The position numbers and the translations under genes are program-made. A stretch of DNA of 12,948 nucleotides from Selaginella moellendorffii (Eukaryota; Plantae; Lycopodiophyta). Numbering within the stretch: position 1 is the stretch's first letter; every line of letters starts with the position of its first letter. The stretch spans positions 1,399,583 through 1,412,530 of the forward strand of contig NW_003314279.1 in assembly GCF_000143415.4 (NCBI RefSeq). The letters run 5' to 3'. The notes beneath the pieces are model-generated. The model did no database searches. It was not told where the DNA came from and saw only the letters and a program-made list of their open reading frames with translations. Shown piece after piece: positions 1 through 12,948 of this stretch.

Positions 1-70
1 ATATATATATATACGTATACATATATATATATATATACATATATATACATATATATATATATATGTATAT
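1..70. repeat. (TA)n/(TATAC)-type microsatellite
   Basis: Near-pure AT dinucleotide run with occasional AC/GT interruptions. Confidence 0.95.
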
Positions 71-1220
71 CATTTGGGACTGAATTTGGTTTATCCATTC
101 TTGTATATAAGCAAGGGTTTAAACCCCAATTAATATACTTATTCTTATATCCCAAGCACTCACATTGATAAGCATTATAATTTATTGGTAGAGGTGACAA
201 ATATTGTAATTTATCTATAAAAGGCAAAGTTTTATGGCAATACTTTGCTCTAGTGTTTAGAATTGTGCTTTCTGTTCTTAATTCTTCATTCTCTTTTAAA
301 TTTATATCTATATTAGAATTCTAATTATTGTTGTGTTTAAATTACTCTTTATTTTGATCTTCATTGCATTCTCTTCTTCTGTTATGCCACATTGTTATCA
401 ATTAAAGAGTATGTCACTTGAGGTTGCTAATGTTGCTCTATTAGATCAAACTTTTAGTGCTATAGAATGTGATCATATTAGTGTTGCACCCATCTTTGAC
501 GTGTTACTGTCTGTAACTTTTGTAAAATGTGATTACATAGTTTGTCATGTTCTTAGTGTTCTACCATCTCTTGTTTGGAGTATGATTGTAATATCAATTG
601 GTGAGCTATGGATGATATAATCTAGTTCTTGAAGAATATTCAAAAATCAAGTTTATTGGAAGACAATGTATACAAGCTTGAGTGGATTCCAAATTATAAT
701 AACAAACTTGATTATTATAGAGATATCTTTGGAGACGAAATAGAGATTTTATAGGGTAGGTGTCAATCCTTGAATTTACCATTTAATTTTTTCTCTATAC
801 TTTCTATTCATTCTTGACCTTTTTTTATTTCTTGGTTTGACCCACCTTTTCATGTTTCTAGTGTTCCTTCCTTATCAATGTTTCTTTCTTATAGAATGTC
901 GATCATTTGCATTTATTCGGATGTAAGTCAGGATATATCATTTTTTGCAATATCATTTCATGGACTATAGTGGTTTTTAAAGTCCCTTGCTTTGGTTTAA
1001 AGTTATAGCTTCAAGATTAATTTGAGTATTTAATAGTTGCATATAGAGTTGCAATTGATTCATTGGGATACTATAGTTGGATTACACTTATGCCATGGCT
1101 TTTGCTTTTGTTTCAGTCTATATGTGTGTGAGTGATTGGGATATAGGAATAGATACATTAATTGGGGTTTAAACCCCTACTTATATACAAGAATGGATGT
1201 AAAAGATTAAGTCCCAAATG
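71..1220. mobile_element. Non-autonomous TIR DNA transposon (deletion derivative, 1150 bp) with 94-bp terminal inverted repeats
   Basis: 71-164 and the reverse complement of 1127-1220 align without gaps at 81/94 identical positions (CATTTGGGAC...ATCCATTCTTGTATATAAG...GGGTTTAAACCCCAATTAAT...CCCAA.CACTCACA). Internal segments recur elsewhere in the window (2490-3015, 11045-11190). No clear TSD or transposase seen. Confidence 0.7.
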
Positions 1221-1494
1221 AATAATCTATATGTTTTAGTATTATAATTAATGTATTGCCTAGTACATGTATATACATATAAATATTTACAAACCTTACA
1301 CCATCCTCCCCTCCAGAAAATGAAAAGGTCATAATAATATGTTAGGTGGAACATTTAGAACTTATATTAGGTGATTATAAATTATTATAAGAATTTGAAG
1401 CTCTCACAAAATTGAGATTTTATTAATAGCAATAATAGAGTGAGGCCAAATATAAATAGCCTCATTTTATCTATCAAAGGATTATTAGTCTGCC

Positions 1495-2047
1495 AATAAT
1501 CCTCTGAGACCACTATTAACTTAAACTCACAACCATAAATAAAATTTATTTTTGCATTTTCCCTTCGATTAACATCTAAAACCTATGTGAACTCGGATTT
1601 ATGACTTTTAGCCTTCCTATGGGAAGTCAGACTCATTCCACATCCTCTTTATCCCCTCCTTGAAGGAAAAAAAGTTCTAAACCATTAACTTTGTTCAAAT
1701 TTGTTACACTCATCCTCACTCTACTATATATATTTAGCCTCACTCCACTATCACATTTATTTGACCTCATTATATCGAGGCTAAATATTCTATTTTAACT
1801 GGTTATACTTGTCATCACCCCACAATCCATATTATTTGTCCTCACTCGACTATCATATCCACTTGTCTTCACTCTATCTTCGGGGCTAAACTCTTGTACA
1901 TCCCCTTTATCCCCTCCTCTAAAGAAATTTTTTTTTGAAATGTCAAAGCAAAAAGGAGAAAATAAGAAATGAGGAGTAAAAAATATTGTGAAAGAAGAAA
2001 AAATGGACAAAAAAGCATTAGAAAATAAATTTTCAATAATTGTCAAA
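1495..2047 (+). repeat. Dispersed repeat segment C, direct copy of ~11235-11832
   Basis: Colinear similarity by eye, e.g. ATAAATAAAATTTA, GGAAGTCA.ACTCA, TTTATCCCCTC.TTGAA.GAAAAAAAGTT, CCTCACTC.ACTATCA, AAGCATTAGAAAAT.AATTTT.AATAATT.TCAAA shared by both copies. Confidence 0.85.
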
Positions 2048-2489
2048 GTAAAAATAGGTAGAAAAGAAGCAAACATATTCAAAACCTATAAAACAGAGGA
2101 TTTGATGTGATAAAATACTTTGGCTAACACAAGATAAGTAAATGATTTATACCACTTAACCTTTTCAACACATAATTCAACACTTGAGATAGAAAAATCA
2201 ATAGAAAAGTCCACTCTCAAGATAATATATAAACCTTTTAATAACAATAATAAAACAAAGGCTCACAACAGCACTCGCAACTAGGGATATACACTCAACT
2301 TGAAATTTTGTCCAAAATTATTCAACCTTAGAAATAGGGGAATACTCAACACCAAAATTTATCAAAAACTCTGCCAAAGAAACAAAAGCAAGATTCTCAA
2401 CTTCCCACATATGCTCAAGATCTAGATTAATGTGAGAAGGTTAGAAAACACTTAATTCAATATTAGAGTGAAAACAAGAATCATAAAAG

Positions 2490-3015
2490 TCATAAATGAT
2501 TGATATGCCAGAAAAAGAAAATATTACAAATGAGAAAGGAACATTAGGAACATGGAAAAGTGGCTCAAGCCAAGAAATAAGAAAAGATTTGGAAAGAGCA
2601 AAAGGTAAAAATAAAGAATCAAATAATAAATTAAAATATTAACACTTACCCTGCAAAATTTCCAACTCATCTTCAATGTTATCTTTATAATAATCAAGTT
2701 CTTCATCACAATCTAAAATCCATTTAAGCTTGTAAATATCATCTTTCCATAAACTCAATTGTTGAATATTCTTCAAAAACTAAATTATATCATCCATAGC
2801 TCACCAATCGATGTCCACACTCGATCACACTCCACATTAATGAAAAATGACCAAATATCGAGAATAGAAAAAATCATGTAATCAATTCCTATAAAAGTTT
2901 AAGATGGCAATACACCAAAAATGGGTCTAATACCAATATAATCACACCCCACAACACCATAAGTTCAATCCAACGTAGTAGCATTAGCAACCTCAAGTAA
3001 TATATTCCTTAGCCC
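2490..3015 (-). repeat. Dispersed repeat segment D, inverted copy of ~400-910 (internal part of the TIR element)
   Basis: The reverse complement shares ACTTGAGGTTGCTAATG, ATTGGTGAGCTATGGATGATATAAT.TAGTT.TTGAAGAATATTCAA, AACTTGATTATTATA.AGATA and TTATTTCTTGG.TTGA.CCAC with 400-910, in the same order and spacing. It ends near the assembly gap. Confidence 0.85.
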
Positions 3016-3025
3016 TCAATCACAG

Positions 3026-3139
3026 NNNNNNNNNNNNNNNNNNNNNNNNNNNNNNNNNNNNNNNNNNNNNNNNNNNNNNNNNNNNNNNNNNNNNNNNNNN
3101 NNNNNNNNNNNNNNNNNNNNNNNNNNNNNNNNNNNNNNN
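3026..3139. other. Assembly gap (114 N)
   Basis: Run of N. Confidence 1.
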
Positions 3140-3260
3140 TGCGATCGGTGATGGTGACGAAGACCGCGCTGGACATGTGACCAATGTCGCCCGTCCTCAC
3201 CCAGCCTCCCTGGAGCACCGCGCCGCTCTCATCCGGGTTGACACAGTAGCCAGTCATCAC
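3140..3260 (-). pseudogene. Fragment of AMP-binding acyl-CoA synthetase (FadD/long-chain-fatty-acid-CoA ligase-like), bacterial-type; probable contaminant or chimeric contig end
   Basis: Minus-strand translation VMTGYCVNPDESGAVLQGGWVRTGDIGHMSSAVFVTITDR matches the ANL superfamily motifs VMxGY and GWxxTGDxGxx...(I/T)xDR. 33 of 40 codons end in G/C. It abuts the N gap on one side and an AT microsatellite on the other. Confidence 0.8.
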
Positions 3261-3284
3261 ACACGGATAGAGAAGCAGCACATC

Positions 3285-3337
3285 CATATACATATACATA
3301 TACATATATACACATACATATATACATATATACATAT
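3285..3337. repeat. (CATATA)n / (TA)n microsatellite
   Basis: CATATA hexamer and TA repeats. Confidence 0.9.
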
Positions 3338-4581
3338 AGAAGTTTATAATTTTAAATATATGTTTATAAATAATACAAAATCTACTACTATAAGGAGCAA
3401 ACGCTGAACTTTGTGGGCCGCCGGATCTGGTACTAATATAAATGAATAACAACATAAAATATCTAAGAATATTCTAGGTATATCCACTACCTAGTCGACA
3501 GGTTTGATTAAGAAAACCATAAATTTATTTATAATATAGAAGTTATGAATGATTACAGACTACTTTATATATTGCCAATAGTAACTTTTCTTTAAGTTAA
3601 TCTTCAAGAAGCAATAAAATATGAAATATTTTAATTCATGGATGTGCTTATTCTAAAAAATGGACTAGATTTAATAATTAAATCAATGTAGATCATTTAA
3701 CTACAATGCCTTAAAAAATTTAATGAAAAGACAGAAAATTTGGAAAGTAAGGAATATATTATTAACAAAATTCATATTAGGTATTTGGAACAAGAATATT
3801 ATTAGTTACCAAATGCATATATGGTACATAGTTCTAATTACTTTATAGTAAATATTAAATTTTTTTTTGTTTCAGTGTTAAATTATAGTCAACATTGAGC
3901 TAATAATTTTAAAGTATGTTCTTTTAGCGTAATGAATATTTCTAGAATATCCAAGTACATTCTAGGATATTTTTCAAGCAAACGGTTTTAATTTTTCTCA
4001 AACTAATATTTTTTACAATTTATAAAATTATTTTGTAATAAGAGTTAATTAGAACTAATATAAACCCTGTTTACAGTTATTTTTAAAGAGAAAATAAAAC
4101 TCTATTATTTTACTTGCAGAACTTCATCATTTTCATCAAACATCTATGCTCATTATACTTATAATAAGACAATTTATCCCAAAAGGATCATTTCTATAGC
4201 ACCACTTACTCCAAATATCTCTGACTTGATATTTTCTTACTAGAACACTTAGAGAAGCTTTGGGAATAATAACACTCTGTCTCCCAAAGAGCTTACTTAA
4301 AGTTTGAAGATCACAATAAGTACTTCTTTTTTATTCTCTTACATGACATAATAAAATAACACAATGTACACAGCAAATTACTTCTTTTGCATTGTTGTAG
4401 TTGATGTCTAGAAACACTTTCTTTTGCAACCTGTTGTTTAATTTGGTGTCATGAAGAGCTCTCTTTATCTTGGAGGAGAGGGATAAACTTTTATCAATTA
4501 GCACAAATTTTATATTGGATTGAGTTTCTCTTAAACAGCTAAATTTAAGCTGCAATGGTCCAATTTCAATTTAGTTTTAAC

Positions 4582-4694
4582 AGTCAACTTATATCCAAGA
4601 AAAAAATGCTTAATGCAGAAAATTATTATTTCCGTTTCTAATTTTGCGATTATGAGGAAAGTCAACCAGGCTGTATGTAATCAGAAAGTTGACC
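4582..4694. promoter_or_regulatory. Cluster of three W-boxes (TTGACY) upstream of the RLK start
   Basis: AGTCAA at 4582-4587 and 4660-4665 (TTGACT on -), and TTGACC at 4689-4694, all within 180 bp of ATG 4758. Confidence 0.45.
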
Positions 4695-5331
4695 AGGCCG
4701 ATGTGTTAATGTGCTTGAAAAGATTGAACTTGTCAGTCAGGATCGTGGGTACACACAATGAATCCCCCCTTTCCAGACGCCCAGCTCGGCTGTGATCCTC
4801 CTCATCCTGATCCAGGCTTTCCTAGCCGCTGGGAAGCTCCTCATGCACGCACAGGACGACGATTTTCCTCTCACCGATTCTGCCAGCAACAAGCTCCACG
4901 CCAGGTTCTTATCTCTCATTACTGCCATCCCTCCCAAGCTCATTTACGATGGAGCCACGGATCCATACTTCCGGGGCCAGGCCATTGTTGACACCTTGTT
5001 CCTCCTGGATTCCAATTTCTCGCTGGTTCTCAACCTCTACTTTTACAACGTCGAGTACTGCGGCCCAAACTTTAGCCCCGACTTTGGTGGCACTGGCAGC
5101 AAGCTTCGCGCTGGATTCACGGCTCTCCTGCCGGATCTCCGAGGTCTCATGAACTTGAGCTATGGAGCGGCCTATGTCGCCCAAGGACAGTTCCAAGCCG
5201 GATACTACATCAAGGGCATGAACTTGAGAGGATCTAATGGATCGTGCTCGTCTCTCCGGGTGGAAAATTCCACGGATCATATTGGCTACTGCTACGACTA
5301 CGAAGACACGCGACTGAGTTACAGTGTTTTC

Positions 5332-5660
5332 GATAGGCTCTACCCGGGTTGCCGGATTCAATCTGCGAAAAAGCCCGAGTACGTGCTGGAAATGCGAGAG
5401 GACTGCAACGCTGTAGCGACACCACTACCAACGAGGTTTTGTGGCAGTCGAAAACGAAGGGAAGCGGAAGGGACTGCGAGCTTGTTCTTGAAAAAACGGC
5501 GACGCTAGCTGTGTATGATCGAAACGGGACTGTCTTGGCGAGGTTTGGGACGAACAACTCCACGAATGCGTCCTTGTTTGCGGTCCAGGGTGATAGAAAC
5601 ATGGTGATCTATGCCATCAGCAACATGAAGACTCCAAAGGCGGTGTGGAGCTCACACACT
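5332..5660 (+). other. GNA/bulb-type mannose-binding lectin domain of the RLK
   Basis: Three-subdomain beta-prism II pattern across two frames, with a Cys pair (DCN...RDC) and an intact Q-x-D-x-N-x-V-x-Y (QGDRNMVIY) at 5586-5612. Confidence 0.85.
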
Positions 5661-5667
5661 TTCAAAG

Positions 5668-5723
5668 GCGAGCTTTTGGAAGTTACAATGTGAATCTCTT
5701 ACATGCTTCTTCTTTCTCACTAG
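5668..5723 (+). other. Non-canonical GC-AG intron (56 nt, phase 1)
   Basis: AAG|GCGAGC donor and pyrimidine-rich ...TTCTTCTTTCTCACTAG| acceptor. Splicing joins ...SHTFK-D-PSSPNG... in frame. Confidence 0.75.
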
Positions 5724-7477
5724 ATCCATCTTCTCCGAATGGATCGACGCCGCAGCCAAATGGTACCAGCTCTGTTTCGCAGCCTTCGTTTAGCTCCAAG
5801 TCGAGGCGAGGGATTCGAACGATTGCAGTCTCCTTAGGAGCGTCTCTCGTTGGAGTGGCACTGGTGATTTTGTGTGTTGTGCTGATTTTGCGAAAGAAAA
5901 GAAATCGTAAAGCTAGCCGGGAAGCGTTGAGCTGGCTACCACCCGGTTCCAAGGCCAGGAAATACTCGTACGAAGAGCTCCAAGAGGCTACCAAAGGATT
6001 TCACAATGACAACAGGTAGGCAGAGGCGGATTTGCGAGTGTGTACAAGGTAAGTCTTTGTTTCTTTCTTTCGAGAAGTTCTTCGACTTTTGATCACACAC
6101 AGGGAGTTATAGACAATCACTTCGTTGCCGTCAAATACTTGACTAGCTCCGACTTATCAGACAAGGCAAGGCGGGATTTCGAGAACGAGGTGTCTACGAT
6201 TTGCCTCCTCCAGCACAAGAATGTTGTCAAGCTTTTTGGTTTCTGCTCTGAGAAAGAGCACAAGCTCATCGTCTGCGAGTTCATCGAGAATGGAAACCTA
6301 TCGGAGGCTTTGTTTAGTAAGTTTCGCTAGATCCATGAAAGAGTTATCATGCTTTCTCTCTCGGCAGGCTCTCCAGACAAAGGTTTGGAGCTAAATTGGA
6401 CAGCCAGATACAACATCTGTGTGGGAGTTGCGCAAGGTCTGGCATACTTGCACGGAGAAACATCACAGGCAACCATCGTGCACAGAGACATCAAGGCCCT
6501 CAACATCCTTCTAGCAAGCAATCTCGAGGCAAAGATCTCGGACTTCGGCCTTGCAAGACTGATCCAGGAAGATCGGAGCTATATCAGCACACGAGCCGCA
6601 GGAACAGTGTAAGTTTTTTGATGTCCAAAATCTTCAACTTCCATGGAGATCGTTTCCAGTGGCTATCTAGCTCTAGAGTACGCTCTCTCCGGCCAGTTCA
6701 CCGAGAAGGCCGATGTCTACTCGTTTGGGATCCTTGTCCTGGAGATCTTGAGTGGAAGGATAAGCATGGATTTCACACTCTCGGATGGCGATTCCTTCCT
6801 TCTCGAACGGGTGAGTGGTTTTGATCTCTATATCTTCGTCTAAGATCCTTCTTCCGAACCAAGCATGGAATGTCTTCCAGAGCGGCCACCTCCTGGAGAT
6901 GATTGACAAGCGACTGGATGTGGACGACGAGCGAGATATTCACGAGATGGAGCGCGTGTTCTTGGTGGCTCTCCACTGCACGCATGCCAGCGGCAGCAGG
7001 CGCCCGTCGATGTTTAGAGTGGTGGGAATGCTCATGGGAGACATGGAAATGGTGGCACCATCTCCAGGCCTGGCTTCCTCTTTGATCTGAGGCAAAACCT
7101 CGAGCAGTCCAAATCTTTAACCAAAACTTGACCACGTTTGCGTTATTTAACTTAAGTGGTACTTTTGACTCTGTCCAAATGCTCAAATAAGTCTACTGTG
7201 GCAGTGTTGCATGATCGCTAGGAATCAAAGGATTTCTATTCGATTGGAAGAAAATGAGCACGAGAAGAGAAAGAGTCCATATACAAATGTTGCTTGGAAG
7301 TTTAGATGGATTCATCCTATATGCCAATTGCCTCTTGCACTTGATTTCTGGCTTGATTTCTGGCAGGATTTCTATGCGTGAGGTGGTATTCCTTTCAGGT
7401 CTGTGTAACACTGTCTTTTGCAAGTGGGATTGATTTACCTAATTCAAAATGCTCAATATCTTTTACCACTTGAGTGG

Positions 7478-8653
7478 TCATGCAACGCAGTTGGAATTGC
7501 TAGATCCATCGAGAATTGTGGGACTCAGGCTTTTCACTAGTGGAGGTGATGAAGCTTTCACCTGCAAAAACAGTGTTCTTAGATTCAAGAACGAGAAGAA
7601 ACAAGAGGATGCTTTTCTCTCGATTGATACGTACTTGGGGTGGCGGACTTGACCCGGAAGATTGCTGCTGGGATTCTGGCCCTCGCTCGCCGTTGTCCTC
7701 CCTGGTTGCTTTCGGAGCTACTTGGAGTGGCTTGTAAGGAGCTTCGGCTGCTAGAGACGGTGGGAAGAACGCAGGGGCTCCATCCTGACCAGTGTAGCCT
7801 CGGAAGGGATTCATTCCTGGAGTTGCGTACTGAGCAAACGGCCTCTCCACGGTGGAGCTAGGAGGAGAAAAGTATGGGAAGTAACCAGCGGCTGGCGGCC
7901 TGTTTGCAAACATTGCGTAAGGATGAATGCCGTAAGGCGGCGGAAGAGGCAAACCGGGAGGAAGGAAAGGAATTGGCGGTGGTGGAATTTGCGAGCCTTG
8001 CGTTGGTGGTGCTTGAGGCTGCTGTTGCTGCTGCTGCTGTTGTGGCTGAAAGGATGGAGGAGCTGCTGGTGATGGAGACGAAGAGACGAGAGGAGGAGGA
8101 CCAGCAGCAGCGGGTGCTGCTGGGACTGGGAGAGGATATGGAAATGCGGACGCACCGAGCATGAGAGAGGGATCCACCGGCCACGACAGCGCGAGCCGGA
8201 GTCTCTGTTGGAGTTGCGAGTTGAGTTGGTCCGTCTCGGACTTGAGAAAAGCTTTCTCTTCTCTTAGCTCGCTCTTCTCCTGTGACAGCTGAAATAGAAA
8301 CAAGCCGGTCCGTCGACAAGTTGAACCAGTAAAAGAGAAAAACTTACGTCACGGGATTCATCCAAAAGTGCTGCATGCTCTTTCTTTAGCCGCTTCACCA
8401 CGGCTCGTAGCTCGTTTATCGCTCAAAATTGTTGCTTTGTCATTTTTAGGCCTGTCTGGATCTGGAGCAACCAAGAAAGAGACGAAATAAGATGGTGAAA
8501 GACGAGAGTCGAGATACGGCACCTAATGCACTGGCGAGCTCGGTAAATTGCTCGTTGAGCTTGTCCCTTCGCAACTTCTCCCTGTCCGCCTTGTGGACTC
8601 TCCTCACGGATGCAAGGTCACCCTCATCGTTTGTAGCGGATCCACACCTTAGC
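7478..8653 (-). pseudogene. bHLH subgroup IVb transcription factor (bHLH121/URI, bHLH11-like; iron homeostasis family), frameshifted and 5'-incomplete
   Basis: Exons 8653-8523 (..RRVHKADREKLRRDKLNEQFTELASAL), 8461-8348 (DPDRPKNDKATILSD//NELRAVVKRLKKEHAALLDESRD), 8288-7635 (LSQEKSELREEKAFLKSETDQLNSQLQQRLR..W..DPS.M...FPYP.P; Pro/Gln-rich) and 7561-7478 (VKASSPPLVKSLSPTILDGSSNSNCVA*). GT-AG introns of 61, 59 and 73 nt. Frameshift at 8417. No in-frame ATG exon found upstream. Confidence 0.9.
8019..8042 (-). repeat. CAG/CAA trinucleotide run encoding Q8 in the bHLH
   Basis: (CTG/TTG)8 on +, translating as QPQQQQQQQQPQ. Confidence 0.9.
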
Positions 8654-8691
8654 CTGGAAAGATTGAAAACTAGTATCACAAAAAACTACAG

Positions 8692-8867
8692 CCACAAAGA
8701 AAAGGAAAACGTTTGCATGAATTTAGCGTGGATCAATCAAACGAAGGCATGGTGCATGGAAGAGAACCACAAACAAAAGGAAAACGTTTGCAAGAATTCA
8801 GCGTGGATCAATCAAACGAAGGCATAGTGAATGGAAGAAAACCACAAAAACAAAAGAAAACGTTTGC
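8692..8867. repeat. 75-bp tandem repeat, ~2.3 copies, in the bHLH 5' intron
   Basis: Units start at 8692, 8767 and 8842 (CCACAAA.AAAAGGAAAACGTTTGCA.GAATT.AGCGTGGATCAATCAAACGAAGGCAT.GTG.ATGGAAGA.AA). Confidence 0.92.
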
Positions 8868-11044
8868 GCATTCGTCAAGAAAAAAAAAAAGGAACGATAA
8901 AAGCGGTTTAAGAAAAATGTTATTTCTGTCTTTATCAAATTAATAAATACAAAAGCTGAAAAATATCTTAATATTACTATATCAAACCAAACAACTTGGA
9001 AATCACTCCTGCTGGGACTTCTTGACACCGTTGGGAGCCTCCTAAATAGATCATACTTTGGTCTTGAGGGCCATGCCAAAATGTTGTCATACTTTCCAAT
9101 CCCAAGTTCGTCTTCTTTTGCTTGGAGCCTGATAACCCAGGCCACGCAAGAATTGAAAAGCACTGGCATGCTGGCTGTTCCCGAGACACCTCTCCCTCCG
9201 GGATCCGCTCACCACAACGTCTACCAGATTATTTGAAAGATTCTTTTGGGATAAAGTATACGGGAGATTACAACATTTTAACAGAAAGGACTAAACTAAG
9301 TGGTATAAACCAACTGTTATAATGAATACTGATAATAAGATAGAGAACGTAGATACCGGTAATTATAATTAGACAGATGGCATTGGTTATGATGAGATAC
9401 ACTAAGGCAATTAGAAAGGTTACAAGGTCGTGACTTTAAAGGCAAATCTTACTGAGAATACAGAATTGATAATGATAAGGTTCTTACCTTTGGAAATAAA
9501 CACCAAATACCTACTATACATGATGGCCACATACAAAGCACATAAGCGTACATTCATATGCTACTAAATGTGTAAATACAAAACTTACAAACCTTATATT
9601 CTATTATTTTAAATCTGCTAGAGTCAGTCACTGAATATTAAATTTCTAGTAAATATTCATTGAGATCTGTAAATGCATCAGTGGTGAAATAGATCAATAT
9701 AGTCTTATGGTTTCATATTCTTCCATTTTGAAACTCATCATCAAAATATGAAGTTCCAAAAGTTTAAATGTCTTTATCTTTTTTCCCAAATCTTCTTAAA
9801 TGCTTGCTTTGTAATCCAAGAAATGGCATTTCAAAATCATCTGCCCCTTTGAGTCAAATGCTCTCATAACATTTAATAATAAGAGTTTTGGTACACATTT
9901 TGTTGCCCAAAACAATTTAGCAGTATAAATATTTGTATATTTATGATAGTATACGGAGAAAAAAAACGGGAATACCCATGGGGTTTTCTTGTTCACTAGC
10001 ATGGCACTATATATATAATGAGTACCAGATTGTTTATATAAAAGTAATTTTAATTACACCAGATATAAAAAGTTTGCTAACTAATTAGAATAGAAAATCA
10101 AGAAATATCCTACACCACCCAAAGAAGAATGAAGGAGAAATAAACACTAGAAAAAAGCATTGCCAAAAAAACCTTACTCTTCAATCATGCACCCACCAAT
10201 GTTATACAAAAATGGATAGATTAATTTTTTTACTGTCTTCAATTTATAGTATTATATATATATACAAAATTTTATTTATATACCTTACAATATATAATTT
10301 CTAGAAAATATTATATGAGTCACCCTTACTAGGTGTAATAAATAGGGAATTTTCATACAAGACTTCAATAGTGGATCAAATCGTCCTATATTATATATAA
10401 AGTTAATTTATCACAATTATTAATATTCCAATTATATAATTACAATAAAATAATTAATAAAAATAATATAAAACTTTAATTGCAATAAAATTTATATAGA
10501 TCAATTTAAATATTAATTTTTTACTTTGCAATATGTTTTTACACTAGCACAAACTACATTACATTAGTATTGTTTAAGAAAACAAAGACAATAGTTTGAA
10601 AGACAGTTAATAAAAGTTAAAATGTAAAATAAAAGGGCTTATGAAGAAAAATGCACTTTTTTCTAATAAATTAAAGGTTTTAAGATACTTAAAATTATGT
10701 ATCTTTGCTTTGGGTTTGAGTAATACTGGGATGAATAACATTTTGAAAAGTTTAAATTCTTATTATAAGAGTAAATTTTTAAATATTGTTTTAAACTTTT
10801 ATTGATTATTTTATTAATGCAAATATGACATAGAGCTACACATAAGAAATATTATGAAAATATTTTATTTTTAATATATAAATGTATTTATAAAATTTAC
10901 ACCATTTTCTCTTTCAAAGATGATGACAATAAATTAGATGGAATATTTAGAGCATTTTCTGACAATTATAAAATACCATAAGAATATAAAACTACCATAA
11001 AACCACTAATATAATTGTTGACAACTATAATTGAAATAAAATCC

Positions 11045-11832
11045 AAAGCCATAACACAAATATCACGACTATGGAATCATGATGCATTAATTATAATTCT
11101 GTGTGCAACTGCCAAATACTTGAACCAACTTTGAAGGTATAAATTTATACCAAAGTAAAAGACTTTGAGAGCCATTGTTGTTCATAAAGCACTATTATAG
11201 CAAATAATATATCCCATGTCTAAGTCTTTCTATTGATGATCCTCTAAGGCTACTAGTAACTTGGACTCATAATTATAAATAAAATTTACCTATGCATCTT
11301 CCCATTAACCAAAATTTAATACTTATGTTAATGTAGACTCATAACTTTCATCCTTGTTTAGTATTATATATAGGAAGTCAAACTCACTTTATTCATCCTT
11401 TATATCCTTTTTATCCCCTCTTTGAAAGAAAAAAAGTTTTGAAGCATCAACTCTATTTGGATTTGTTGTGCTTATTCTTACTTTACAATCTATATTCAGC
11501 CTCACTCTACTATCATATTTATTTGGCCTCACTACACTATCATATTTGTTTGGCTTTATTATATTAGGGCCAAATATTCTATTTAGATTTGCTATATTTG
11601 TCTTCACTTTATAATTCATGTTATTTATTTTTGTTCCACTATTATATTCATTCATCTTCACTCTATTGTTGGGGTTGGACTCCTATTCATCCCCTATACC
11701 CCCTCCTTCAAAGAAAAAGAAATTTAAACTATCATTGTAAAAAAGAGAAAGTGAGGAAAATTGAAAAGACATTGTTGAAGAAAAAAAATGAATAAAGAAG
11801 CATTAGAAAATGAATTTTTAATAATTATCAAA
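11045..11832 (+). repeat. Third copy of the same repeat family (segment B = reverse complement of ~955-1105, followed by segment C = 1495-2047)
   Basis: 11045-11190 matches rc(955-1105): AAAGCCAT, TGCAACT...AAATACT, TTGAAG.TATAA.TTTA.ACCAAAG.AA..GACTTT. 11235-11832 matches 1495-2047. Includes a 27-bp tandem pair at 11500-11553. Confidence 0.8.
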
Positions 11833-12090
11833 TATTGCAAATTTGACTACGGGTATCAAAAGTTACCTATTGGCAAATTCTTTCAAATATTCTTTCCTTA
11901 TTGCCACGATAGTAAAAAGTTGGTATTGTTGAACCCTTTTTTAATTTCCACCTAAAATAGTTGAGAAATTGATTATCATATGTGAAATTAGATTAGAAGG
12001 GCACTAAAGAAGAAAATCTTAAGTTGTTATTCAGTCAAACATATTTGACACGGTAATGAGAAATTTATGTTATTAACTTGCACATGTTAG

Positions 12091-12948
12091 TGTTGGGAAC
12101 CCTTGTGATATTAAGTTTAGTCCCTTAATATTTATTACATGATAACATACTGTGTCTACCAAGATACTTTTTCTATCATGCCTCTTGTGTTTAGTCTCAT
12201 TAGCTATTTATAGAAAGTGTCTAGTGTAAGCCATAATTTTTTTTTTCTAATTTACTAGCTTACCTTGTCTATTCGATCACTACAACCTTAGCCTTAGTTA
12301 AGTTTTCTTGCCAAGATTCTCACCTATTGTACTAGTTTTTACTTAATCCTACTTGGTTTCAGCAACTCACTACACTAACAATGGAGCGTTAGTCATCCCT
12401 CTCCCAATCCCCCTTCCCAGGTTAGATTGGACTTAATGTTTGGCTACACTCCTCGCAGGCATAAATAGACAAACATATCAAGCCTGCAAACTCTTAACAT
12501 CCCTTAGTACAACAAGACTTGATAATGGGACCCTCTAAATCCTAAGCCTTAGATGCAACTCTTGCTTCAGAACATCGAAGGAAAACACCGTGGCCTAATG
12601 GCTCGGTATAGGTACCCTACTCCCCCACTTTTATCCCAAAGGAAAGGCTTAAGCCTTTAGGAAGGGTGAGGACCAATAAACCATAAATTACTCAAGTAGG
12701 GCACCATTTTATATGATCCACATGAGTTAGGAGCATTGTAGTCAATTTCCCTTCCTGGAGTGAAGAGTTGCTTTTGAGCACTTCTTTAGGTGGCCCCTCT
12801 AGCACCATTCAAGTTTATGCTCACTCCCACCCAAGGGCCTTAAACCCCAGTCTCAACCTCAAGTCAATTTGGAAGCACCACTAGATAATTCCTAGATCTC
12901 ACTATCTCTATTAACCTTTTGGAGCCCCTTTGCACCCCCCCCCCCCCC
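12091..12948 (-). mobile_element. Possible LTR of an LTR retrotransposon preceded by a G-rich polypurine tract
   Basis: The minus strand reads G14 immediately followed by TG (12934), which is a PPT-LTR junction pattern. The region is more GC-rich and non-coding, with a TATAAAA on - near 12707-12713. The left boundary (TGTTGGG at 12091) is a guess. Confidence 0.3.

What the first reader, a model, noticed from the sequence alone, without database searches (positions are those of the whole stretch)
4758..7090. Receptor kinase with an apparently uncatalogued ectodomain: unknown/chitinase-like module + GNA lectin on an LRR-VIII-2/DUF26-type kinase
Seen: after repairing three frameshifts, one protein runs signal peptide - ~160-aa domain (4852-5330) - bulb lectin (5332-5660) - Ser/Pro linker - TM - RD kinase. 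Established: canonical G-type lectin (S-domain) RLKs place the bulb lectin at the N-terminus, followed by S-locus glycoprotein, EGF and PAN domains. None of these appear here, and the lectin is membrane-proximal behind another domain. The kinase sequence (LNWTARYNICVGVAQGLAYLH, SYISTRAAGT) and intron positions (VYK|G, LF|S, GTV|GY, LLER|AW) resemble the LRR-VIII-2/DUF26 group. Inference: an independent, lineage-specific shuffled receptor that may sense two kinds of microbial glycan.
Basis: partly seen in the sequence, partly recalled or inferred. Interest (0 to 1): 0.8.

Follow-up and report, generated by a model that had tools for sequence, protein, structure and literature searches.

The report
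Broken spikemoss lectin receptor kinase copy
This is a decayed copy of a small spikemoss-only family of cell-surface receptor kinases, whose outer part joins a domain found nowhere else to a snowdrop-type lectin; intact, transcribed sister copies exist, but what they sense is unknown.

Summary

This copy is a pseudogene. Compared with four intact Selaginella moellendorffii copies (97-97.7% nt identity), it alone carries five disabling lesions:
- an 11-bp deletion in the signal peptide;
- a 4-bp deletion in the lectin;
- a 1-bp deletion before the Gly loop;
- a G>A change that destroys the intron-5 acceptor;
- a 1-bp deletion in the C-terminal tail.

It also has APE>ALE in the kinase.

- **Transcripts:** spliced RNA contigs from three studies join N-domain, lectin, TM and kinase, so the design is not an assembly chimera.
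- **Lectin:** confirmed against solved bulb lectins (E 4e-16), although it scores below Pfam's cut-off. One of three mannose motifs is intact.
- **N-domain:** an orphan. An exhaustive search of 1.84 billion proteins found two clusters, both S. moellendorffii. I found no Pfam or PDB match, no GH18 or malectin match, and the fold was not predictable.
- **Kinase:** groups with LRR-VIII-2 (LRR-malectin) kinases, not with SD-1/CRK.

RefSeq already lists the intact copies, named as LRR kinases. I found no paper describing the design. The scan noted the same architecture elsewhere in this genome (s1-380719, s1-341449).

The parts
4758..4854 (+). Start codon and signal-peptide coding region, broken by an 11-bp deletion behind 4789 (frame 0 to frame 1)
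   Evidence: Alignment with four intact copies. From ATG 4758 the ORF stops at 4991.
4855..5352 (+). Orphan N-terminal ectodomain (about 165 aa, 4 conserved Cys, GYCY motif); intact frame in the window
   Evidence: 94.6% identical to P0003 residues 33-198 and conserved in P0007 at about 34%. No family, PDB or fold match.
5332..5667 (+). GNA-type bulb lectin (beta-prism II), broken by a 4-bp deletion behind 5413; third QxDxNxVxY motif intact
   Evidence: PDB phmmer E 4e-16 to 1e-7 for the intact paralogue; Foldseek TM about 0.6 to bulb lectins; deletion shown.
5668..5723 (+).
   Evidence: RNA joints in X4, X8 and X10; conserved in all copies; an intron at the same place in the P0007 locus.
5724..6048 (+). 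Exon 2: Ser/Pro linker, TM (about 5822-5890), juxtamembrane region and Gly-rich loop; 1-bp deletion at 6014
6103..6316 (+). Exon 3, kinase (VAVK lysine region)
   Evidence: Pfam PK_Tyr_Ser-Thr 1.9e-12; RNA joints.
6368..6608 (+). Exon 4, kinase (HRDIK catalytic loop, DFG)
   Evidence: Pfam 2.4e-15; RNA joints.
6660..6810 (+). Exon 5, kinase; APE motif changed to ALE in the window only (P574L)
6811..6862 (+). Intron 5; the acceptor AG is mutated to AA by G>A at 6862, in the window only
6863..7130 (+). Exon 6, kinase C-lobe and tail; 1-bp deletion behind 7050; ancestral stop at 7128-7130

Best explanation
The window holds a recently decayed, duplicated copy (pseudogene) of a Selaginella-specific receptor-kinase family.

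Intact members are type-I membrane proteins. One exon encodes the whole ectodomain: signal peptide, an orphan Cys-containing domain of about 165 aa, and one compact GNA-type beta-prism lectin. A GC-AG intron separates it from the exons for the linker, TM and an RD kinase of the LRR-VIII-2 lineage.

Inferred origin: an LRR-VIII-2-type TM-kinase module acquired a new ectodomain exon, as proposed for CRKs.

Inferred function: the ectodomain binds a mannose-containing glycan through the one surviving lectin site, with the orphan domain adding or changing specificity. Binding would then activate the kinase.

The family sits in tandem arrays with dead copies, the birth-and-death pattern usual for stress and immune receptors. 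The window copy itself cannot make the receptor.
For: Shown:
- Five window-only lesions against four intact copies at 97-97.7% identity, plus APE>ALE.
- All DNA and RNA contigs laid on these sites carry the intact forms.
- A second, truncated dead copy lies in L001.
- Spliced RNA contigs from three studies cover N-domain plus lectin, and lectin plus TM plus kinase.
- The lectin matches solved bulb lectins at E 4e-16 and by fold.
- The N-domain falls in only two 50% clusters, both S. moellendorffii, and is conserved between groups at 34% with invariant Cys. An 80% group lies at L006.
- The Selaginella kinases form one supported clade (97/90). That clade sits next to a fern LRR-malectin kinase (97/81) and then seed-plant LRR-VIII-2. 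The best single-kinase hits are 47-50% identical and are all LRR-malectin.
- Holding the family together with SD-1/CRK costs 24 lnL units, AU p 0.03.
- dN/dS among copies is 0.3-0.55; for the N-domain it is 0.22-0.59.

Context: CRKs are thought to have arisen by fusion of a secreted protein with a TM-kinase module, with the ectodomain in one exon (PMC6368629).
Against: - No read set carried the window's own lesions, so they are not independently confirmed.
- The window's dN/dS is not raised, so the decay is very recent or partly artefactual.
- Ligand, sugar binding and kinase activity are untested.
- Two of three lectin motifs are degenerate.
- The tree has one partial SD-1 kinase and no SD-2 or SD-3 kinase.
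- The AU rejection is only marginal (p 0.03).
Confidence: 0.8

Rival explanations
1. The window gene is functional, and its indels are errors of this assembly.
For: No run shows the window's own variants at 5413, 6014 or 7050. Four lesions are small deletions. The window's dN/dS is like that of the intact copies.
Against: There are five independent lesions. They include an 11-bp and a 4-bp deletion outside homopolymers and a base substitution at a splice acceptor, plus a substitution in the APE motif. The adjacent bHLH exon keeps an 801-bp open frame. The sequence also differs from every other copy by many SNPs, so it is a distinct copy, not a mis-polished one.
Confidence: 0.12
2. The family is an ordinary G-type (S-domain) lectin receptor kinase that simply lost its SLG, EGF and PAN domains.
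For: It has a B-lectin and a kinase of the DLSV supergroup, which also holds SD-1. Atypical B-lectin/kinase combinations are common in surveys (PMC3616866).
Against: The kinase groups with LRR-VIII-2, and SD-1/CRK are separate (AU p 0.03). The lectin is the compact GNA type: E 4e-16 to free bulb lectins but only 2% hhalign probability to an SD-1 ectodomain. The lectin sits behind an unrelated domain.
Confidence: 0.06
3. The ectodomain was captured whole from one of the secreted 'unknown domain + bulb lectin' proteins that abound in this genome, so the N-domain is a diverged member of their front domain.
For: The layout and size are the same. One such unannotated ORF lies about 8 kb from the intact copy in L002. 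Earlier notes describe the secreted family. A short shared motif (GYCYGF versus TYLYGF) aligns.
Against: The front domains are no more alike than shuffled sequence: z between -0.4 and 2.1 and hhalign probability 0.5%. An earlier follow-up reached the same result (s1-341449).
Confidence: 0.25

Closest known systems
LRR-VIII-2 receptor kinases (At1g56130/At1g56140 type, LRR + malectin ectodomain; RLK-Pelle DLSV group)
   Same: The kinase domain is 47-50% identical and sits in the same clade in the tree. It is an RD kinase. RefSeq names the intact copies after At1g56140.
   Different: No LRRs and no malectin domain (Pfam none; hhalign probability 0.2%). The ectodomain is replaced by an orphan domain plus a GNA lectin.
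G-type (S-domain) lectin receptor kinases, SD-1
   Same: A bulb-type lectin in the ectodomain of a single-pass RD receptor kinase.
   Different: There the lectin is N-terminal and followed by SLG, EGF and PAN. Here it is membrane-proximal behind an unrelated domain, and those three domains are absent. The kinase is not in the SD-1 clade. The lectin resembles free GNA lectins more than the S-domain lectin.
Free monocot-type bulb lectins (GNA, Polygonatum PCL, Scilla SCAfet)
   Same: A three-lobed beta-prism II of about 110 aa; 27-30% identity over the full domain; one complete QxDxNxVxY motif.
   Different: It is fused into a receptor. Two of the three sugar motifs are degenerate, at different lobes in different paralogue groups.
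Cysteine-rich receptor kinases (DUF26/CRK), as an evolutionary analogue
   Same: The ectodomain is encoded in one exon and joined to a TM-kinase module of the related LRR clade. There is lineage expansion in tandem arrays.
   Different: No C-X8-C-X2-C motif and no DUF26 hit. The ectodomain is unrelated.

Membership tests
G-type (S-domain) lectin receptor kinase | Bulb-type lectin domain in the ectodomain | tested here: met
   PDB phmmer E 4e-16 and a Foldseek match. Pfam B_lectin scores only 15-19 bits against a cut-off of 32.4.
G-type (S-domain) lectin receptor kinase | N-terminal lectin followed by S-locus glycoprotein, EGF and PAN domains | tested here: not met
   No Pfam hits. hhalign of the N-domain to an SD-1 ectodomain gives probability 0.3%.
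G-type (S-domain) lectin receptor kinase | Kinase inside an SD clade | tested here: not met
   SD-1 is separate in the tree; AU p 0.03. SD-2 and SD-3 had no representative and were not tested.
LRR-VIII-2 receptor kinase | Kinase in the LRR-VIII-2 clade | tested here: met
   Holding the family with all LRR-VIII-2 kinases is not rejected (p 0.11).
LRR-VIII-2 receptor kinase | LRR repeats plus malectin domain in the ectodomain | tested here: not met
   Pfam none. hhalign to a malectin alignment gives probability 0.2%.
GNA-type mannose-binding lectin | Three QxDxNxVxY sugar-binding motifs | tested here: inconclusive
   Read from the alignments: only motif III is complete in the P0003 group and the window, and only motif II in P0007. 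Binding was not tested.
   No Glyco_hydro_18 hit in Pfam at E 10. No GH18 chain in the PDB profile search at E 10. The fold is not predictable.
Duplicated pseudogene | Frame or splice lesions absent from intact, transcribed paralogues | tested here: met

The most novel reading that the evidence does not exclude
The roughly 165-aa N-domain is a genuinely new extracellular fold that arose in the Selaginella lineage. Together with a captured GNA lectin on an LRR-VIII-2 kinase, it defines an undescribed class of plant pattern-recognition receptor with a composite glycan-binding surface.
Probability: 0.35. Interest if true: 0.55.

Novelty: new variant of a known kind. Interest (0 to 1): 0.38.

Why it matters
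It documents ectodomain swapping on an LRR-VIII-2 kinase in a lycophyte, parallel to the proposed birth of the CRKs.

It also shows that lectin receptor kinases can be missed by surveys that use Pfam cut-offs. This family scores 15-19 bits against a cut-off of 32.4, and RefSeq names it as an LRR kinase.

The orphan domain is a candidate new ligand-binding module, and the intact paralogues are testable. The window's own copy is dead, so its direct biological weight is small.

Tried and rejected
- **GH18, malectin, SD-1 or second-lectin identity for the N-domain:** no signal in Pfam, NCBIfam, a PDB profile search or hhalign.
- **Structure prediction:** AlphaFold2 on the whole ectodomain and on the N-domain alone gave N-domain pLDDT of 26-45, which is unusable. 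Only the lectin part folded.
- **ESM Atlas look-alikes for the N-domain of two paralogues:** only chance-level hits.
- **Word-index searches with the ectodomain and with the lectin region:** they found only the family itself, so no S-domain kinases were obtained for the tree.
- **Kinship of the N-domain with the neighbouring secreted lectin's front domain:** not above shuffled controls.
- **An intron as the explanation for the other frame breaks:** rejected. Only 5668-5723 is an intron.
- **Literature search by six accession numbers:** nothing found.

Full report
**What is in the window.** The gene at 4758-7130 (+) lies in a GC-rich island (0.44-0.53) between AT-rich flanks (0.20-0.30). Earlier notes of this scan name the genome as Selaginella. 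The closest public proteins are all from S. moellendorffii. Six-frame reading and Pfam on the pieces show kinase exons, a TM segment and a weak B_lectin match (13.8 bits). The first 208 residues match nothing.

**Transcripts and gene structure.** I laid contigs of one DNA run and three RNA runs, from four studies, on 4600-7300. The RNA contigs are spliced.
- Five introns are seen: 5668-5723 (GC-AG), 6049-6102, 6317-6367, 6609-6659 and 6811-6862.
- One RNA contig runs unbroken over 4767-5667, covering the N-domain and the lectin.
- Others run from 5544 through all kinase exons to about 7135.
- The domain order therefore exists in real mRNA.
- These contigs are only 95-99% like the window, and at each break in the window they carry extra bases that restore the frame.

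**The window copy is a pseudogene.** An exhaustive phmmer search with the N-domain found XP_024532818 (P0001, 96% identical). Cluster look-ups added XP_024522484/5/6. I fetched their loci. None of them is the window: gene bodies are 97.0-97.7% identical.

In the multiple alignment the window alone has these lesions:
- an 11-bp deletion behind 4789, in the signal peptide;
- a 4-bp deletion behind 5413, in the first lectin lobe;
- a 1-bp deletion at 6014, just before the Gly-rich loop;
- G>A at 6862, turning the intron-5 acceptor AG into AA;
- a 1-bp deletion behind 7050, in the C-terminal tail.

It also carries a private P>L change in the APE motif. From the ATG the window reads 77 codons to a stop.

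A further copy in L001 (700-3297) is truncated by several deletions. dS among copies is 0.03-0.055 and dN/dS is 0.3-0.55. The window is not elevated, so the decay is recent.

One caveat remains. No read set showed the window's own variants, so the lesions lack independent confirmation. Their number and kinds make assembly error unlikely.

**The lectin.** Pfam's B_lectin model gives only 15-19 bits against a cut-off of 32.4. The intact domain (P0003 residues 196-322) nevertheless matches solved bulb lectins over their full length. Scores are E 4e-16 for Scilla SCAfet, 1.6e-11 for the Polygonatum lectin and 8.5e-8 for GNA. The AlphaFold model of this part (pLDDT 67-81) matches the same structures at TM about 0.6.

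Read from those alignments, only the third QxDxNxVxY motif is complete in this group and in the window. In the diverged paralogue P0007 only the second is complete. The domain is far closer to free GNA lectins than to the lectin of an SD-1 ectodomain (hhalign probability 2%).

**The N-domain.** It spans P0003 residues 33-198 and has four conserved Cys and a conserved GYCY motif. Three paralogue groups retain it: the array of copies at 93-96% to P0003, L006 at 80% and P0007 at 34%.
- The search of 1.84 billion representative proteins found two clusters only, both S. moellendorffii.
- There is no hit in Pfam, NCBIfam or PDB sequences at E 10.
- hhalign finds nothing against the family's own lectin, against malectin domains of LRR-VIII-2 kinases, or against an SD-1 ectodomain.
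- The Atlas gives chance-level hits only.
- AlphaFold2 gives pLDDT 26-45, so the fold is unknown.
- The GH18 idea has no support.

**The kinase.** The best single-kinase hits (47-50% identity) are nearly all LRR-plus-malectin receptors of the At1g56130/40 type. I built a maximum-likelihood tree of 42 kinase domains.
- The Selaginella family forms one supported clade (97/90), which includes P0007, P0010 and an RLCK-like gene.
- This clade is sister to a Pteridium LRR-malectin kinase (97/81; identified), and then to seed-plant LRR-VIII-2.
- A Eucalyptus SD-1 kinase and a CRK kinase group elsewhere.
- Forcing the family together with SD-1/CRK costs 24 lnL units (AU p 0.03). Joining it with all LRR-VIII-2 kinases is not rejected (p 0.11).
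- No SD-2 or SD-3 sequence was available.

**Origin and function (inferred).** The whole ectodomain sits in one exon, separated from the TM-kinase exons by an intron that is conserved across the paralogues. This is the same modular layout described for CRKs, which are thought to have formed by fusing a secreted protein to a TM-kinase module (PMC6368629).

Secreted 'unknown domain + bulb lectin' genes are common in this genome. One lies about 8 kb from the intact copy in L002. Its front domain is not detectably related to the receptor's N-domain, which agrees with the earlier follow-up s1-341449.

The most likely function is glycan sensing through the surviving mannose site, with signalling by an RD kinase. 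This is untested.

**Novelty.**
- RefSeq lists the intact proteins but names them as LRR kinases.
- UniProt flags a bulb-lectin domain in one fragment.
- None of the six accession numbers I searched (five of its RefSeq/UniProt accessions and one locus tag) appears in any searchable paper.
- The S-domain survey that included Selaginella used Pfam trusted cut-offs, which this lectin does not reach (PMC3616866).
- About 30% of plant receptor kinases lack one of the seven common ectodomains (PMC10834447), so an unusual ectodomain is not in itself surprising.

I rate the family as a new variant of a known kind, and the window copy as a dead member of it.

Noticed in passing
window 7500-9240 (-): A bHLH transcription-factor gene of the IRO3 type (Pfam HLH and bHLH_IRO3 on 8449-8679) lies tail-to-tail with the kinase. 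It is duplicated together with the kinase as one unit in L001, L002 and L003.
   Followed up: partly
L006 9081-10004 (+): An intact 307-aa ORF with signal peptide, N-domain and lectin (about 80% identical to P0003) lies just upstream of the annotated start of XP_024540215 (396 aa). That RefSeq model therefore appears to be missing its first exon.
   Followed up: partly
L002, L003, L004 (models P0001, P0005, P0004), equivalent to window 5640-5755: Three RefSeq models skip 24 alignment columns (one of them a gap; the end of the lectin and the start of the linker) by using a different intron. The RNA contigs support the GC-AG intron used in XP_024522486.
   Followed up: partly
L001 700-3297: A second dead copy of the family. 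It has several deletions of 7-248 bp and lacks the last kinase exons. It is followed by its own bHLH copy.
   Followed up: partly
L002 20212-21081 (-): An unannotated, AT-rich, single-exon ORF of 289 aa for a secreted 'unknown domain + bulb lectin' protein (B_lectin 24 bits), about 8 kb from the intact receptor gene.
   Followed up: partly
L003, equivalent to window 4789: The copy encoding XP_024522484 has its own 1-bp deletion in the signal-peptide region. This probably explains why its model uses a different start and lacks the usual signal peptide.
   Followed up: no
window 1-4500 and 9500-12948: The flanks are very AT-rich (GC 0.20-0.31). ORFs of 90-148 aa there match no Pfam family. Parts recur beside other copies of the array at 85-96% identity.
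   Followed up: no
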